The notes beneath the pieces are model-generated. The model ran no database searches, had not been told where the DNA came from, and saw nothing but the letters and a program-made list of their open reading frames with translations. A program made the translations under genes and the position numbers. Below are positions 1,092 through 11,523 of a DNA stretch of 17,899 nucleotides, one piece after another. The stretch lies in NCBI RefSeq assembly GCF_006345805.1, contig NW_021824561.1:1-17899 (forward strand), in the 5' to 3' direction. Positions within the stretch are counted from its first letter, which is position 1. Each line of letters begins with the position of its first letter. Source of the stretch: Octopus sinensis (taxonomy: Eukaryota).

Positions 1092-1725
1092 CACACACGC
1101 AATTTTTAAGAAGTTAACTGTTACTTTATTTTATCGATCTTGAAGGAATGAAATGCAAGGTTGACCTCATTGTGATTTGAACTCAAAACGTAAAGTATTT
1201 TTTTTTTTACTACCCACAAGGGGCTAAACACAGAGAGGACAAACAAGGACAGACAAACGGATTAAGTCGATTATATCGACCCCAGTGCGTAACTGGTACT
1301 TATTTAATCGACCCCGAAAGGATGAAAGGCAAAGTCGACCTCGGCGGAATTTGAACTCAGAACGTAACGGCAGACGAAATACGGCCACGCATTTTGCCCG
1401 ACGTGCTAACGTTTCTTATTTCTTTACTATCCACAAGGGGCTAAACACAGAGAAGACAAACAAGGACAGACAGACGGATTAAGTCGATTATATCGACCCC
1501 AGTGCGTAACTGGTACTTATTTAATCGATCCCTAAAGGATGAAAGGCAAAGTCGACCTCGGCGGAATTTGAACTCAGAACGTAACGGCAGACGAAATACG
1601 GCTACGCATTTTGCCCGACGTGCTAACGTTTCTGCCAGCTCGCCGCCTTTCAAAACGTAAAGTGCTGAAAGAAATCTTTATCCGACGCACGAACGAATGA
1701 ACGATCCTTCTAGATCAGCCCCTTA
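1092..1725 (-). mobile_element. Old degenerate group A SINE split by a younger insertion (host parts about 1092-1196 and 1664-1725)
   Basis: TTTTATCGATCTTGAAGGAATGAAATGCAAGGTTGACCTC ... GATTTGAACTCAAAACGTAAAGT is a diverged group A core and B box; similarity resumes after the second TSD copy. Outer limits approximate. Confidence 0.6.
1197..1649 (-). mobile_element. Young group A SINE dimer (head + two bodies, 217-bp period)
   Basis: 14-bp TSD TCAAAACGTAAAGT at 1183-1196 and 1650-1663. Internal junction at 1416/1417 reads AAAGAAATA|AGAAACGTTAGC on the minus strand. A-rich 3' end. Confidence 0.93.
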
Positions 1726-4481: not shown

Positions 4482-4906
4482 AGGCGGCGAGCTGGCAGAA
4501 ACGTTAGCAAGCCGGGCGAAATGCTTAACGGTATTTCGTCCTGCGTTACGTTGTGAGTTCAAATTCCGCCGAGTCGACTTTGCCTTTCATCCTTTCGGGC
4601 CTTTCGGGGGTCGATAAATTAAAGTACCAGTTACGCACTGGGGTCGATGTAATCGACTTAATACCTATGTCTGTCCTTGTTTGTCCCCTCTGTGTTTAGA
4701 GCCCCTTTGGTAATAAAGAAATAGGTATTTCGTCTGCGTTACGTTGTGAGTTCAAATTCCTCCGCCGAGGTCGACTTTGGCCTTTCATCCTTTCGGCGTC
4801 GATAAATTAGTACCAGTTACGCACTGGGGTCGATGTAATCGACTTAATACCTATGTCTGTCCTTGTTTGACCCCTCTGTGTTTAGCCCCTTGTGGGTAAT
4901 AAAGAA
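4482..4906 (+). mobile_element. Young group A SINE dimer
   Basis: 17-bp TSD ATAGGTATATGATATGA at 4465-4481 and 4907-4923. Junction AAAGAAATA|GGTATTTCG at 4723/4724. Several small indels. Confidence 0.94.
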
Positions 4907-4924
4907 ATAGGTATATGATATGAT

Positions 4925-5132: not shown

Positions 5133-5445
5133 TGTTGTTGTTTGTTCCTTTTCGAGCCATGCCTTGCTCATAAGGGCCGGTTTCCTGGTTTCATTGGCGT
5201 ATAGTTTCCCTGCCTGGACGGGACGCCGGTCCGTCGCAGGCGAGCTGCAAGATACAGGAGGAAAAAAAGTGTGAGAAAATTAAGGTGAAAATGTCTGCAG
5301 AAGTTCGCCATTAACTTCTACCGGAACCGCGTGGAATTTAGGTGTTTCGCTCATAAACACACACACATCGCCGGTCTGAGATTCGAACCCGCGATCTCCT
5401 CGACCGCGACTTTGCTGCTCTAACCACTAGGCCAAGTACCTCCAT
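5133..5445 (-). mobile_element. Group C tRNA-derived SINE (V-like module, CAA-type tail)
   Basis: Minus strand TGGAGGTACTTGGCCTAGTGGTTAGAGCAGC ... GGGTTCGAATCTCAGACCGG, collinear with 15590-15885. Confidence 0.85.
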
Positions 5446-5706
5446 GATTGAAGCAACTAGAAGATAAAGATTAAAGATTGGCGACGATGATGTGGTTATT
5501 GCTGTTATTTCTCCTTTTGATGATGATGATTAATCTCATATCGGCCTAAGGACTTTCCAGCCGTGGCCATCATAGTACATTTGCTTTTAGATACTACATG
5601 CAGTTTCATTGTTCAATACATTCTCAAAGACTTTCTTTCTTTAAGAGAATCGGTTGTGAGTCGAAGAATTCTTCGCTACAGATTCTAGCAGATCAACGTT
5701 CGGTAT

Positions 5707-6215
5707 AGCGTCTCTCTTTCTCTCTGTCTATCTCTCTATCTCACTCATTTACTCTCTCTCTCTTTCCCCCTCTCTCTCTCTCTCTCCTTCTCTTCCCATC
5801 TTCCTACCTCCTCCATGCTTTCCCTATCTCCCTCCTTTCTCCTTCAATCCCTCTCCCTCCCTCTCTCCTTCTCTCCCTCCCTTCCTCTCCTCGCCCTATC
5901 TCCCACTCACCCCCGTCTGTCTTCCTCCCTCTCCTTCTGTCTTCCTCTCTTTCCCTTTCTCTCCCCTGTATCGCTCTCCCTCTCTCCTCCCTCTTTCTCT
6001 CTCCCTCTCTCACTCACTCACCCTATCTCCCACTCTCCCCGTCTGTCTTCCTCCCTCTCCTTCTGTCTTCCTCTCTTTCCCTTTCTCTCCCCTGTATCGC
6101 TCTCCCTCTCTCCTCCCACTTTCTCTCTCCCTCTCTCACTCACTCATCCTTTCTCCTCCTTTCCCCCTCTCCCTATCCCATGTCTCTATCTGTCTCCCTT
6201 CCCGTTACTCTCTGG
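5707..6215. repeat. CT-rich polypyrimidine tract containing a ~127-bp tandem duplication (5894-6020 / 6021-6147)
   Basis: GTCTGTCTTCCTCCCTCTCCTTCTGTC ... CCCCTGTATCGCTCTCCC occurs at 5915 and 6041. Confidence 0.9.
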
Positions 6216-6782: not shown

Positions 6783-7377
6783 TATTTCTTTACTACCCAC
6801 AAGGGGCTAAACATAGAGGGGACAAACAAGGACAGACAAAGGGATTAAGTCGACTACATCGACCCCAGTGCGAAACTGGTACTTTATTTATCGACCCCGA
6901 AAGGATGAAAGGCAAAGTCGACCTCGGGGGAATTTGAACTCAGAACGTATCAGTAGACGAAATACCTATTTCTTTACTACCCACAAGGGGCTAAACATAG
7001 AGGGGACAAACAAGGACAGACAAAGGGATTAAGTCGACTACATCGACCCCAGTGCGAAACTGGTACTTTATTTATCGACCCCGAAAGGATGAAAGGCAAA
7101 GTCGACCTCGGGGGAATTTGAACTCAGAACGTATCAGTAGACGAAATACCTATTTCTTTACTACCCACAAGGGGCTAAACATAGAGGGGACAACAGGACA
7201 GCAGCAGGGATTAAGTCGACTACATCGACCCCAGTGCGAAACTGGTACTTTATTTATCGACCCCGAAAGGATTAAAGGCAAAGTCGACCTCGCGGATTTG
7301 ACGTCAAGAACGTAACAACAGACGAATACCGCTAAGCATTTCGCCCGGCGCACTAACGTTTCTGCCAGCTCGCCGCC
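6783..7377 (-). mobile_element. Group A SINE trimer (head + three bodies, 184-bp period)
   Basis: Junctions CGAAATACC|TATTTCTTT at 6966/6967 and 7150/7151. Units 6783-6966 and 6967-7150 read as identical. Head ends GCTCGCCGCC at 7377. TSD is obscured by (TA)n flanks. Confidence 0.95.
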
Positions 7378-7530
7378 ATGTATATATATATTCACACACA
7401 CACACACGCATATACATAGACACACATAAACACTATCACATATATTTGGCTTTCATATTTGGTTCCCAACTCACACACACACGTATATGTATATGTATGT
7501 ATGCATATAAATGTGTGCGTGTGGTTTGTG

Positions 7531-7538
<8 letters not shown>

Positions 7539-7613
<75 letters not shown>

Positions 7614-7659
7614 TGTGCGTGAGAGAGAGAGAGTGTGTGGCGTGAGAGAGAGAGAGAGA
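7539..7659. repeat. (TA)n followed by (GA)n compound microsatellite
   Basis: Direct reading. Confidence 0.95.
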
Positions 7660-7680
7660 GAATTCACAACCCCCCCCCCC

Positions 7681-7845
7681 AAGACGAAGACTGGTGGTGT
7701 AGACAACAAACAGATGTATTAGTACAACGCTCGGGAATTGAAAATGTCTTTAACGTTTCGAGCCTACGCTCTCCCACAGAAGGGAACACAGAAAGAAACA
7801 AGGAGAGAAAATAAAGAATGTGTAGTGGCTAGCGATCTATCCTGG
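7681..7845 (-). mobile_element. Older Penelope-like pLTR-type unit with degenerate hammerhead-like motif (7752-7779)
   Basis: Minus strand CTGTGGGA-GAGC GTAG GCTC-GAAACGTT; homologous to 7903-8060 at 210-bp spacing. Confidence 0.6.
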
Positions 7846-7858
7846 CGAATGATATATA

Positions 7859-8342
7859 ACGGGAAGCTTTATGAAAATAAACAAAAGACGAAGGCAGGTG
7901 GAAAACAAACGAACAATTGTATTAGTATGGCGCTCAGGAAATATAAATAAAACAAGTCTTTAACGTTTCGAGCCTACGCTCTTCAACAGAAAGATACACA
8001 GAGAGAGAAAAACACAGAAAGAAGGAGAGAAAAAAAATGCGTGCAGTAGCTAACGAATCAACATGGCGATCTGATTTCGGCTCGAAACGTTAAAGACTTG
8101 TTTTATTTATATTTCCTGAGCGCCATACTAATACAATTGTTCGTTTGTTTTCCACCTGCCTTCGTCTTTTGTTTATTTTCATAAAGCTTCCCGTTATATA
8201 TTATGCGCTCACGTGGTCTCACTTTCATCCTATATTCTACCAATACCACTATCAACACTTACCTCTACCTTGGATTTTCTTTACCTCTTGGATACTTACC
8301 ATTGGCTGCACCTCTCTTTCGCGGATCAAAGTGACTTTGCAT
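7859..8342. mobile_element. Young non-autonomous Penelope-like insertion with head-to-head inverted structure
   Basis: 13-bp TSD CGAATGATATATA at 7846-7858 and 8343-8355. Perfect 123-bp inverted repeat 7852-7974 / 8079-8201. Hammerhead-like motif at 7962-7989 (-). The Penelope assignment rests on the minimal HHR plus inverted pseudo-LTR architecture; no RT or GIY-YIG ORF is present. Confidence 0.7.
7957..7994 (-). ncRNA. Minimal type-I hammerhead ribozyme-like motif with variant core (A6U)
   Basis: RNA UCUUU-CUGUUGA-A-GAGC GUAG GCUC-GAAA-CG-UU-AAAGA. Stem I is 5 bp (UCUUU/AAAGA), stem II 4 bp with a tetraloop, stem III the palindromic ACGU; predicted cleavage after GUU. Activity untested. 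Confidence 0.55.
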
Positions 8343-8371
8343 CGAATGATATATATATATATATATATATA

Positions 8372-8495
8372 AGCAGAAGAGCGTAGGCTCGAAATGTCGA
8401 AGAGGTCAATATAAATCTAATCCGTTTGTCCTGAGTGCCAAACCTCTATACCCTTATTGTATTTCCTTCGCCTCTCTCTGCCATTTACTTTTGCC
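8372..8495 (+). mobile_element. Third, more diverged Penelope-like unit with partial hammerhead-like motif
   Basis: GAAGAGCGTAGGCTCGAAATGTC (8376-8398), then TCCTGAGTGCCA and a pyrimidine-rich stretch resembling 8079-8180. Confidence 0.55.
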
Positions 8496-8662
8496 TTTTT
8501 TTGATCATTTTGAACTAATATATATGTATATCTGTGTGAGTGTGTATGTGTGTGTTCGTTCGATAGGAGCAGTTTCTATGGTGATTGTAAGATAACCGAA
8601 TGCGTGGGATCGATACATACATCCTGGAATTCGACCTTTTGATCGATTCATAAGTTCACTAT

Positions 8663-9425: not shown

Positions 9426-9658
9426 AGGCGGCGAGCTGGCAGACACGTTAGCGCGCCGGGCAGAATGCTTAGCGGTATTTCGTCTGTCGTTACGTTCTGA
9501 GTTCAAATTCCGCCGAGGTCGACTTTGCCTTTCATCCTTTCGGGGTCGATAAATAAAAGTACCAGTTTCGCACTGGGGTCGATGTAATCGACTTAATCCC
9601 TTTGTCTGTCCTTGTTTGTCCTCTCTATGTTTAGCCCCTTGTGGGCAATAAAGAAATA
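9426..9658 (+). mobile_element. Young group A SINE monomer (defines unit length)
   Basis: 16-bp TSD TATATGTGTATGGAGG at 9410-9425 and 9659-9674; ends AATAAAGAAATA. Confidence 0.95.
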
Positions 9659-9717
9659 TATATGTGTATGGAGGTGTGCGTGAGTGTGCGTGTATATATG
9701 TTTGTGCCTGTGTGCGT

Positions 9718-11027: not shown

Positions 11028-11159
11028 AAACCGCGATCCTATGACCGCGAGTCCGCTGCCCTAACCACTGGGCTATTGCGCCTCCACAACTTGAAGAAGT
11101 ATACCTTACCCAAGCTTGGCCACTGTCAATGGACTGGCCAAGTAAAAAAATAAAAGTTC
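11028..11159 (-). repeat. 132-bp inverted duplicate of 9778-9909 (unique flank + group C SINE head)
   Basis: The reverse complement aligns without gaps to 9778-9909 with 4 mismatches by manual comparison. Confidence 0.93.
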
Positions 11160-11523
11160 GTCTGCCGCTACGCTCTGAGTTCAAATTCCGCCGAGGTCGA
11201 CTTTGCCTTTCATCCTTTCGGGGTCGATTAAGTAAGTACCAGTTACGCACTGGGGTTGATATAATCGACTTGATCCGTTTGTCTGTCCTTGTTTGTCCTC
11301 GCTGTGTTTAGCCCCTTGTGGGTAGTAAAGAAATAGGTATTTCGTCTGCCGCTACGTTCTCAGTTCAAATTACGCCGAGGTCGACTTTGCATTTCATCTT
11401 TTCGGGGTCGATTAAATATGTACCAGTTACTCACTGGTGTCGATGTAATCGACTTAATACCTTTGTCTGTCCTTGTTTGTCCCCTCTATGTTAAGCCCCT
11501 TTTGGGCAATAAATAAAGAAATA
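11157..11523 (+). mobile_element. Headless group A SINE dimer (two dissimilar bodies)
   Basis: Starts at TTCGTCTGCC. Junction AAAGAAATA|GGTATTTCG at 11335/11336. Ends AAATAAAGAAATA followed by (TA)n. Confidence 0.92.

What the first reader, a model, noticed from the sequence alone, without database searches (positions are those of the whole stretch)
7752..8398. Family of minimal hammerhead-like motifs with a non-canonical CUGU core
Seen: the motif GAGC-GTAG-GCTC-GAAA-(C/T)GT(T/C) occurs at 7752-7779 (-), 7962-7989 (-) and 8376-8398 (+), with a half copy at 8079. The 7957-7994 copy folds into type-I hammerhead topology: stem I UCUUU/AAAGA, CUGUUGA, one extra A, a 4-bp stem II, GAAA, palindromic ACGU stem III and a GUU site. 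Known: Penelope-like elements carry minimal type-I HHRs whose palindromic stem III is thought to form by dimerisation; the canonical core is CUGANGA. Both complete copies have U at core position 6 although their flanks have diverged, so this looks like a family trait rather than random decay. Inference: either a natural core-variant ribozyme, possibly active only as a dimer or with protein help, or a catalytically dead HHR kept as a structural signal for the RT.
Basis: partly seen in the sequence, partly recalled or inferred. Interest (0 to 1): 0.85.

Follow-up and report, generated by a model that had tools for sequence, protein, structure and literature searches.

The report
Penelope retroelement hammerhead with U6 core
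The repeated motif is the minimal hammerhead-ribozyme module in the 3' end of a very abundant Penelope-like retrotransposon of an octopus genome; the whole family carries U instead of the normally invariant A at core position 6, so it is a natural test of whether these elements need ribozyme cleavage at all.

Summary
GAGCGTAGGCTCGAAAYGTY lies at 7752-7771(-), 7962-7981(-) and 8379-8398(+), with a half copy at 8079; none is expected by chance.

The motif is not a free-standing RNA gene. [quoted passage not shown] Copies are 5'-truncated, end in (TA)n and form inverted pairs, as in the window.

Genome-wide, CTGTNGAA+stem II+GAAA occurs 16,346 times against 657 with a non-T at position 6, of which about 140 have A. 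U6 is therefore the family consensus, not decay.

Related PLEs from other assemblies, 87 of 87 metagenome matches, and a second 204-copy family in the same genome all have the canonical CUGANGA. They share the bulged A, G10.1-C11.1 and the ACGU palindrome, and their helices I and II covary.

Four subfamilies, about 4-19% diverged, are identical over 40 nt except at N7 and H17.

Whether U6 cleaves cannot be computed. My best guess is that the fold is retained and the chemistry is impaired. This is a new variant of a known kind.

The parts
7654..7851 (-). Copy 1: a 5'-truncated 3' end of the PLE, older subfamily B type (N7 = G). Its 3' side runs into (GA)n and then (TA)n at about 7530-7653. C10 at 7671-7680 replaces the family's T-run.
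   Evidence: Profile match 7853->7527; alignment to the subfamily consensus; sequence.
7747..7784 (-). HHR-like module of copy 1: CCCUU-CUGUGGG-A-GAGC-GUAG-GCUC-GAAA-CGU-U-AAAGA. It has U6 plus a private A9-to-G change.
7852..8078 (-). Copy 2: a 5'-truncated copy of the young subfamily A (N7 = U). Its 3' end is ...CCCGTTATATAT and it abuts the 5' end of copy 1.
   Evidence: Profile match 8085->7852; subfamily A copies are on average 4.3% from their consensus.
7957..7994 (-). HHR-like module of copy 2: UCUUU-CUGUUGA-A-GAGC-GUAG-GCUC-GAAA-CGU-U-AAAGA. This is the complete family-consensus motif with U6.
8079..8212 (+). Inverted partner of copy 2: the same subfamily, 5'-truncated inside stem II (it starts GGCUCGAAACGUU). 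Together with copy 2 it forms the head-to-head PLE insertion.
   Evidence: Inverted repeat 7845-7974 / 8079-8208, 98% complementary; profile match.
8372..8525 (+). Copy 3: an old, strongly diverged copy that is 5'-truncated inside the core (GCAGAA-GAGC-GUAG-GCUC-GAAA-UGU-C-GAAGAGG). (TA)n lies upstream at 8349-8371 and TA-rich sequence downstream.
   Evidence: Profile match 8375-8555 at 46.7 bits; exact 16-mer; no close relative found by DNA search.

Best explanation
Shown: the motif is the minimal type-I hammerhead (min-HHR) module of a Penelope-like retrotransposon.
- The element has RT followed by a C-terminal GIY-YIG endonuclease with a C-x4-C-x2-C linker, which is the Neptune/Nematis type.
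- It inserts into (TA)n microsatellites.
- It makes up tens of thousands of mostly 5'-truncated copies in this genome. The genome is probably Octopus sinensis, judged from matching assembly statistics.
- The module lies on the sense strand, about 675 nt after the stop codon and about 125 nt before the 3' end.
- In the lineage that gave rise to this family the invariant core A6 became U. The change is fixed in all four subfamilies and in 96% of copies. Sister lineages, and another PLE family in the same genome, keep A6.

Inferred: U6 strongly reduces or abolishes self-cleavage, because A6 changes are highly deleterious in hammerheads and PLE min-HHRs are weak even when canonical. The module stays under purifying selection in the master copies because its fold is what the element needs, not its chemistry. 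Possible uses of the fold are RNA-RNA pairing through the ACGU palindrome, or recognition by the RT-EN protein near the site where reverse transcription starts. The size of the family then shows that canonical hammerhead catalysis is dispensable for PLE proliferation.
For: Identity as a PLE:
- Upstream of long copies the sequence translates to ...NVIYCISC..YIGQTGRRLADRFAEH.. and to the linker C-SRPR-C-CT-C.
- 45 homologues were found, many carrying PF01541.
- An RT fragment aligns to the RVT_1-annotated ORF of a relative at E = 4e-11.
- Copies end in (TA)n and are 5'-truncated. The window holds an inverted pair.

Homology to canonical min-HHRs:
- Family X reads GCU-CUGACGA-a-GGGC-uaac-GCUC-GAAA-CGUC-AGC. 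Family Y reads ACC-CUGAAGA-a-GGCA-guaa-UGCC-GAAA-CGUC-GGU. Both lie 75-110 nt after the EN stop codon.
- All 7 tested pairs of helices I and II form in every lineage. 6 of 7 have changes on both sides. Slid controls give only 29-55% pairing.

U6 is fixed:
- 16,346 copies have U6 against 657 with another base. Among the first 100 of those 657, 70 are C, 21 A and 9 G.
- A 204-copy family Z in the same genome has A6 in 96 of 100 listed copies.
- 87 of 87 metagenome matches to a pattern that allows A or T have A.

Constraint on the motif:
- The four subfamily consensus sequences differ at 2 of 40 motif columns, against 65 of 158 flank columns (p = 3.6e-6). Without the ascertained 16-mer the figure is 2 of 24 (p = 0.0013).
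- Subfamilies range from about 4% to about 19% divergence.

Literature:
- The defining min-HHR traits and the low in vitro activity are described in PMC4209133.
- A natural A6C variant has kobs below 0.1 per min (PMC3088659).
- Naiad PLEs thrive without canonical HHRs (PMC8557442).
Against: - No cleavage data exist for A6U in this context, so the loss of activity is inferred, not shown.
- The only two variable positions among the subfamilies are N7 (all four bases) and H17 (U or A, never G). These are exactly the free positions of a working hammerhead, which fits retained ribozyme function as well as retained fold.
- (TA)n-flanked truncated copies begin at the predicted cleavage product (AAAGAC) more often than at neighbouring positions: 8-12 of about 45. 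TA microhomology confounds this.
- No protein or RNA partner for a non-catalytic role is identified.
- The clade assignment rests on the linker and EN motifs of decayed copies. Pfam itself gave no hit on them.
Confidence: 0.55

Rival explanations
1. The U6 module is still a working self-cleaving ribozyme. It would be a natural A6U core variant that cleaves after GU(U/A), acting as a dimer through the ACGU palindrome or with help from the PLE protein or host factors.
For: - The conservation pattern is that of a functional hammerhead. Only N7 and H17 vary among the four subfamily consensus sequences. G10.1-C11.1, the bulged A, GAAA and the ACGU palindrome are all kept.
- There is a mild excess of 5'-truncated copies that start at the predicted cleavage product.
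- Rare natural core variants, including A6C, retain low activity (PMC3088659).
- Canonical PLE min-HHRs are themselves very slow in vitro, so a slow variant may be sufficient (PMC4209133).
Against: - A6 is invariant in active hammerheads, and substitutions cut the rate by orders of magnitude (systematic mutagenesis cited in PMC3088659; exact figures from my memory only).
- This motif lacks the tertiary loop contacts that rescue other core variants.
- The excess of 5' ends is confounded by TA microhomology.
- U6 creates an extra U6-A15.1 pair that favours a rod-like, non-catalytic fold in the predicted minimum-energy structure.
Confidence: 0.25
2. The module is a neutral relic. A6U knocked out a dispensable ribozyme in one master copy, and the rest of the motif looks conserved only because too little time has passed or because it hitch-hikes with neighbouring functional 3'-end sequence.
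For: - HHR catalysis is not needed for PLE insertion in vitro (PMC11167929).
- Naiads lack canonical HHRs (PMC8557442).
- Other blocks of the 3' end, ACTAATACA and CCACCTGYCTTCGTCTTTTGTTT, are also conserved among subfamilies.
- Individual dead copies decay evenly across motif and flanks (single-subfamily set).
Against: - The 40-nt motif is the longest invariant block among four subfamilies whose flanks differ at 41% of columns and by indels.
- The block also stays close to the motif of PLEs whose endonucleases are only about 47% identical.
- A relic should have picked up changes at positions other than N7 and H17.
Confidence: 0.15
3. The motif is not hammerhead-related. It would be a chance hairpin plus GAAA inside a SINE or MITE, for example a pol III B-box-like GTTTCGAGCC read on the opposite strand.
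For: - The opposite strand resembles tRNA A and B boxes (GTGTAGTGGCTA, GTTTCGAGCC) (my reading).
- The copies are short and flanked by (TA)n.
- No Rfam hammerhead model matches.
Against: - The box-like words are about 145 nt apart, and ARAGORN finds no tRNA.
- Variable 5' truncation and the (TA)n 3' end fix the sense strand as the hammerhead strand. Longer copies continue into an RT-EN ORF on that strand.
- Canonical homologues exist at the same place in related PLEs.
- Rfam also misses those canonical min-HHRs, so its silence carries no weight.
Confidence: 0.03

Closest known systems
Minimal hammerheads of metazoan Penelope-like elements (min-HHR; Cervera and de la Pena 2014, PMC4209133; Lunse, Weinberg and Breaker 2017, the latter from memory)
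   Same: - Type-I topology with no real helix III.
- An ACGU palindrome at positions 15.1-16.1, suited to dimer formation.
- An unpaired nucleotide between A9 and G10.1.
- A conserved G10.1-C11.1 pair and a 4-5 bp helix I.
- Location in the terminal repeat or 3' region of a PLE.
- Thousands of mostly solitary, truncated copies per genome.
   Different: Core position 6 is U in the family consensus (CUGUNGA), whereas the published descriptors and families have CUGANGA. The only family-level core variant reported there is the U3-A8 covariation. Helix II here is short (4 bp).
Neptune/Nematis-type EN+ PLEs (Arkhipova 2006; Craig et al. 2021, PMC8557442)
   Same: - RT followed by a C-terminal GIY-YIG endonuclease with CCHH-type cysteines.
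- A CX2-5CxxC linker.
- A bias towards microsatellite (TA)n targets.
- Tandem and inverted 5'-truncated insertions.
   Different: - Canonical HHRs are said to be universal in all PLE clades except Naiad and Chlamys. This family breaks that rule at one core position.
- It has an unusually long, G-poor (6.9% G) 3' UTR between the ORF and the HHR.
- Clade placement was not tested by phylogeny.
Naiad/Chlamys PLEs without canonical HHR (PMC8557442)
   Same: Very high copy number despite lacking a canonical hammerhead, and (TA)n targeting.
   Different: Naiads have an N-terminal EN and no recognisable HHR fold, only occasional core strings. Here the EN is C-terminal and the whole min-HHR architecture is kept apart from A6.
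Natural hammerhead core variants (Perreault et al. 2011, PMC3088659)
   Same: A deviation at an otherwise invariant core position. A6C in phage Bcep176 keeps low activity.
   Different: Those are single or rare loci with tertiary contacts that were tested biochemically. This is A6U, fixed in about 17,000 copies of a retroelement, with no tertiary contacts, and untested.
Animal non-LTR retrozymes and Sm-alpha-type tandem HHR repeats (PMC7229834; bioRxiv 10.64898/2026.07.22.740005)
   Same: Short non-autonomous units that carry a type-I HHR and are probably derived from PLE terminal repeats.
   Different: Retrozymes are regular tandem arrays with canonical, active HHRs and circular RNA products. 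The copies here are dispersed 5'-truncated 3' ends, and the two adjacent minus-strand copies in the window belong to different subfamilies.

Membership tests
PLE minimal hammerhead (min-HHR) | Lies on the sense strand in the 3'/terminal-repeat region of a Penelope-like element | tested here: met
   The EN ORF lies about 675 nt upstream on the same strand, and the motif is about 125 nt from the (TA)n 3' end.
PLE minimal hammerhead (min-HHR) | 5' catalytic box C3-U4-G5-A6-N7-G8-A9 | tested here: not met
   The family consensus is CUGUNGA. 16,346 copies have U6 against 657 non-U, of which about 140 have A. All other box positions are met.
PLE minimal hammerhead (min-HHR) | 3' box G12-A13-A14 followed by A15.1 | tested here: met
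   GAAA is invariant in all subfamily consensus sequences and in the relatives.
PLE minimal hammerhead (min-HHR) | Unpaired nucleotide between A9 and 10.1, and a G10.1-C11.1 closing pair | tested here: met
   The bulged A is present in 28 of 30 and 28 of 29 sampled copies. G-C is invariant across lineages.
PLE minimal hammerhead (min-HHR) | Palindromic 15.x-16.x (ACGU) in place of helix III | tested here: met
   GAAA-CGU is found in the octopus family and in families X, Y and Z.
PLE minimal hammerhead (min-HHR) | Helices I and II supported by covariation | tested here: met
   100% of cells are paired, and 6 of 7 pairs have changes on both sides across three lineages. Slid controls give 29-55%. 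Only three independent lineages were available, so the sample is small.
PLE minimal hammerhead (min-HHR) | Cleavage-site nucleotide H17 is not G | tested here: met
   The subfamily consensus is U or A. Sampled copies give A20/T10 and T28/A1.
PLE minimal hammerhead (min-HHR) | Self-cleavage, as a dimer | not testable with these tools
   Needs in vitro transcription and cleavage assays. The only proxy is the 5'-end census, which is inconclusive.
Rfam hammerhead families | Match to a curated hammerhead covariance model | tested here: inconclusive
   No hit at E <= 10 in window 7650-8500. In the scan of 20 genomic copies no hammerhead family appears among the 150 rows shown; 42 lower-scoring rows were not shown. 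Canonical min-HHRs of families Y and Z are missed as well.
Penelope-like element, EN+ with C-terminal GIY-YIG (Neptune/Nematis type) | GIY-YIG endonuclease downstream of the RT in one reading direction | tested here: met
   VIY..YIG..R..EH motifs. Homologues carry PF01541. An RT fragment upstream aligns to a relative's RVT_1 ORF at E = 4e-11. Pfam gave no direct hit on the decayed copies.
Penelope-like element, EN+ with C-terminal GIY-YIG (Neptune/Nematis type) | CX2-5CxxC linker before the EN | tested here: met
   L061 reads GSFPC-SRPR-C-CT-CPYL. This was seen in single decayed copies only.
Penelope-like element, EN+ with C-terminal GIY-YIG (Neptune/Nematis type) | Microsatellite target, with tandem or inverted 5'-truncated insertions | tested here: met
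   A (TA)n 3' flank is seen in nearly all copies. The window holds an inverted pair.
Penelope-like element, EN+ with C-terminal GIY-YIG (Neptune/Nematis type) | Placement inside the Neptune clade by RT phylogeny; 30-40-bp 'tail' | not tested

The most novel reading that the evidence does not exclude
A hammerhead with U at core position 6 is functional in vivo. Either it is the first natural A6U self-cleaving core, working as a dimer or with the PLE protein, or the hammerhead fold has an essential non-catalytic role in Penelope-like retrotransposition that has kept a 40-nt module intact through about 17,000 insertions.
Probability: 0.3. Interest if true: 0.8.

Novelty: new variant of a known kind. 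Interest (0 to 1): 0.55.

Why it matters
What hammerheads do in Penelope-like elements is an open question. They are nearly universal in these elements, yet barely active in vitro, and they are dispensable for insertion in the one reconstituted system.

This family is a natural knock-in experiment at large scale. A core position regarded as invariant has been changed and fixed, the element went on to produce tens of thousands of copies over several subfamilies, and every other hammerhead feature stayed frozen.

A canonical sister family in the same genome, and canonical homologues elsewhere, provide matched controls. That makes the question directly testable with short RNAs (U6 against U6A) and with RNA-end mapping.

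The case also shows that searches using a strict CUGANGA descriptor, and the Rfam models, miss whole families of PLE hammerheads.

Tried and rejected
- tRNA-derived SINE reading on the opposite strand, using A-box-like and B-box-like words. Rejected: the boxes are about 145 nt apart, ARAGORN finds nothing, and the direction of truncation plus the upstream ORF fix the other strand as sense.
- TA-targeting MITE or DNA transposon. Rejected: there are no terminal inverted repeats. Copies share a 3' end and differ in their 5' ends.
- Rfam, at gathering and at permissive thresholds. No hammerhead match (only the top 150 of 192 rows were shown). Controls show the models do not cover canonical min-HHRs either.
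- DNA similarity search of the genome with the motif region and with copy 3. It returned nothing or only the query itself, because common words are skipped. Exact patterns were used instead.
- A canonical hammerhead elsewhere in the element. A descriptor scan of 129 kb of copies found none at a recurrent position. It did turn up the unrelated canonical family Z by chance.
- Hierarchical clustering of copies into subfamilies. It was noisy because of the (TA)n tails, so subfamilies were defined by N7 plus diagnostic downstream sequence.
- Pfam on decayed ORF fragments. No hit, so homologues and motif reading were used instead.
- The 5'-end census as a proxy for in vivo cleavage. A suggestive peak, but confounded by TA microhomology.

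Full report
**Observation.** The window is a whole 17.9-kb scaffold of a 2.72-Gb, 13,516-scaffold eukaryotic assembly. These figures match those tabulated for Octopus sinensis GCA_006345805.1 (PMC10700109). That identification is an inference from the numbers only.

GAGCGTAGGCTCGAAAYGTY occurs at 7752-7771(-), 7962-7981(-) and 8379-8398(+). None of 200 shuffles gave a match. A half copy starts at 8079.

**What the repeat is.** The 16-mer GAGCGTAGGCTCGAAA occurs 20,439 times in the genome and its reversed control 0 times.

- Thirty sampled loci share about 200 nt that end in (TA)n. Their 5' ends fall at different points.
- This fixes the hammerhead-like strand as the sense strand of a retroelement that is 5'-truncated on insertion.
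- Walking upstream with the longer copies leads through about 600 nt of G-poor 3' UTR (6.9% G).
- Beyond that lies coding sequence that translates to ...NVIYCISCSLCPSLYIGQTGRRLADRFAEHLRDI..., preceded by a C-x4-C-x2-C linker.
- Further upstream are RT fragments. One aligns to the RVT_1-annotated ORF of a relative at E = 4e-11.
- The endonuclease ORF has 45 homologues, many with PF01541 GIY-YIG. Pfam itself gave no hit on the decayed octopus copies.

This is the architecture of an EN+ Penelope-like element of the Neptune/Nematis type. The (TA)n preference and the tandem or inverted 5'-truncated insertions are as described for PLEs (PMC8557442).

**Anatomy of the locus.** The window holds four pieces.

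- 7654-7851(-) is an older subfamily-B copy.
- 7852-8078(-) is a young subfamily-A copy.
- 8079-8212(+) is the inverted partner of the subfamily-A copy. The two arms are 98% complementary, and the partner is truncated inside stem II.
- About 8372-8525(+) is an old, diverged copy truncated inside the core.

The two minus-strand copies are therefore independent insertions. They are not one tandem transcription unit.

**Is it a hammerhead?** Cervera and de la Pena (PMC4209133) list traits of metazoan PLE min-HHRs that were not built into their search descriptor:

- a G10.1-C11.1 pair;
- palindromic positions 15.2-16.2;
- a helix I of 4-5 bp.

All of these are present here.

Homology is direct. 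Related PLEs were fetched through the endonuclease homologues. They carry the following motifs 75-110 nt after the stop codon:

- family X: GCU-CUGACGA-a-GGGC-uaac-GCUC-GAAA-CGUC-AGC;
- family Y: ACC-CUGAAGA-a-GGCA-guaa-UGCC-GAAA-CGUC-GGU.

On an alignment of the octopus subfamilies with X and Y, all 7 pairs of helices I and II form in every sequence. Six of the 7 have changes on both sides. Slid controls give only 29-55% pairing. This rests on three independent lineages only.

Rfam finds no hammerhead in the window. In the scan of 20 genomic copies none appears among the 150 rows shown, and 42 lower-scoring rows were not shown. It also misses the canonical min-HHRs of families Y and Z. That negative result therefore says nothing about U6.

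**Position 6.**

- CTGTNGAAGAGCGTAGGCTCGAAA occurs 16,346 times. The same pattern with a non-T at position 6 occurs 657 times.
- Of the first 100 of those 657, 70 are C, 21 A and 9 G. They are spread over all N7 types.
- U6 is thus present in 96% of copies. A6 is present in about 0.8%, as scattered mutations.

Two controls bear this out.

- A second min-HHR family in the same genome was found by chance in L062. It reads CAC-CUGAUGA-a-GGCUGA-N8-UCAGCC-GAAA-CGUU-GUG. It has 204 copies, and 96 of the first 100 have A6.
- A metagenome scan with a pattern that allows A or T at position 6 returned 87 motifs. All have A.

**Constraint.** Four subfamilies have N7 = U, G, A and C respectively. Among the first 100 genomic hits N7 is U in 50, A in 21, C in 15 and G in 14.

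- Mean divergence from the subfamily consensus is 4.3% for A, about 18% for B and about 19% for C. Subfamily D was not measured.
- The four consensus sequences are identical over the 40 nt CTTTCTGT-N-GAAGAGCGTAGGCTCGAAACGT-H-AAAGACTT, except at N7 and H17.
- That is 2 of 40 variable columns in the motif against 65 of 158 in the flanks, p = 3.6e-6.
- Leaving out the 16-mer used for ascertainment gives 2 of 24, p = 0.0013.
- Within one subfamily sampled without reference to the motif, copies decay evenly across motif and flanks. This is as expected for dead insertions.

Master copies have therefore kept the module, including U6, through a long period of activity.

**Mechanism.** The following are shown:

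- the motif is a PLE min-HHR homologue;
- U6 is fixed and derived;
- the module is under constraint;
- the family is very successful.

The rest is inferred. A6 substitutions are strongly deleterious. A natural A6C variant has kobs below 0.1 per min even with tertiary contacts (PMC3088659). Canonical PLE min-HHRs are barely active in vitro. [quoted passage not shown]

I therefore favour a catalytically impaired module that is retained for its fold or its pairing properties.

Two results keep the active-variant rival alive.

- The only free positions are exactly N7 and H17, as in a working hammerhead.
- Among about 45 (TA)n-flanked truncated subfamily-A copies, 8-12 begin at the predicted cleavage product AAAGAC. 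A uniform spread would give about 1.6 per position. TA microhomology at UUAAAG is a confounder, because the loop TA collects about 6.

Folding predicts helices I and II. It also predicts an extra U6-A15.1 pair that favours a rod-like alternative structure. This is of uncertain meaning.

**Comparison and novelty.** This is a member of the PLE min-HHR lineage by descent and by architecture. It fails the defining 5' box at one position.

I found no description of an A6U family or of octopus PLE hammerheads in the papers searched. Absence from that library is not proof of novelty. I rate it a new variant of a known kind.

Noticed in passing
window 1202-1633, 1921-2290, 4530-4914, 6783-7330, 9426-9680, 11157-11517: A 184-nt unit (once 217 nt) is always present as 2-3 head-to-tail copies, in both orientations, at six places in 18 kb. 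It contains a tRNA B-box-like GGGTTCAAATTCCGCC. Neither ARAGORN nor Rfam recognises anything in it. It looks like a SINE-like element that inserts as short tandems.
   Followed up: partly
L031-L060 (3' UTR of the PLE); L078:798-1184: The roughly 600-nt 3' UTR between the endonuclease stop codon and the hammerhead-like module is strongly depleted of G on the sense strand (6.9% G against 20.5% in the window). The closest outside relative (Logan SRR11869391) shows the same bias, at 8.8% G.
   Followed up: partly
L062:1983-2030, and 204 places in G000: A second PLE-type min-HHR family with a canonical core lives in the same genome: CAC-CUGAUGA-a-GGCUGA-agggtata-UCAGCC-GAAA-CGUU-GUG. In L062 it also sits in a head-to-head inverted pair.
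   Followed up: partly
window 5700-6215: A G-poor, CT-rich low-complexity block with a 126-nt tandem repeat and GC skew of -0.55. It resembles the low-complexity G-poor stretches seen upstream in some PLE copies (L027, L009).
   Followed up: no
window 7671-7680: A run of ten C (G10 on the element's sense strand) replaces the T-run of the family consensus in copy 1. This may be a homopolymer artefact of the assembly or a real change.
   Followed up: no
G000, about 45 loci listed: 5'-truncated subfamily-A copies that abut (TA)n begin more often at ...AT|AAAGAC, the predicted hammerhead cleavage product, than at neighbouring positions. All junctions show TA or A microhomology.
   Followed up: partly
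window 5370-5440: A tRNA-like fragment (ggtctgagattcgaacccgcgatct...ctaaccactaggccaag) lies on the minus strand. It is probably another tRNA-derived SINE remnant, and ARAGORN does not call it.
   Followed up: no
L082-L161 (metagenome contigs Ga0126336/7, OMLO01...): Host-associated metagenome assemblies hold many copies of the family X min-HHR (CTGACGAAGGGCTAACGCTCGAAACGT in 69 of 87 matches), several as close inverted pairs about 40 nt apart. This is evidently invertebrate host DNA carrying an active-looking PLE.
   Followed up: partly
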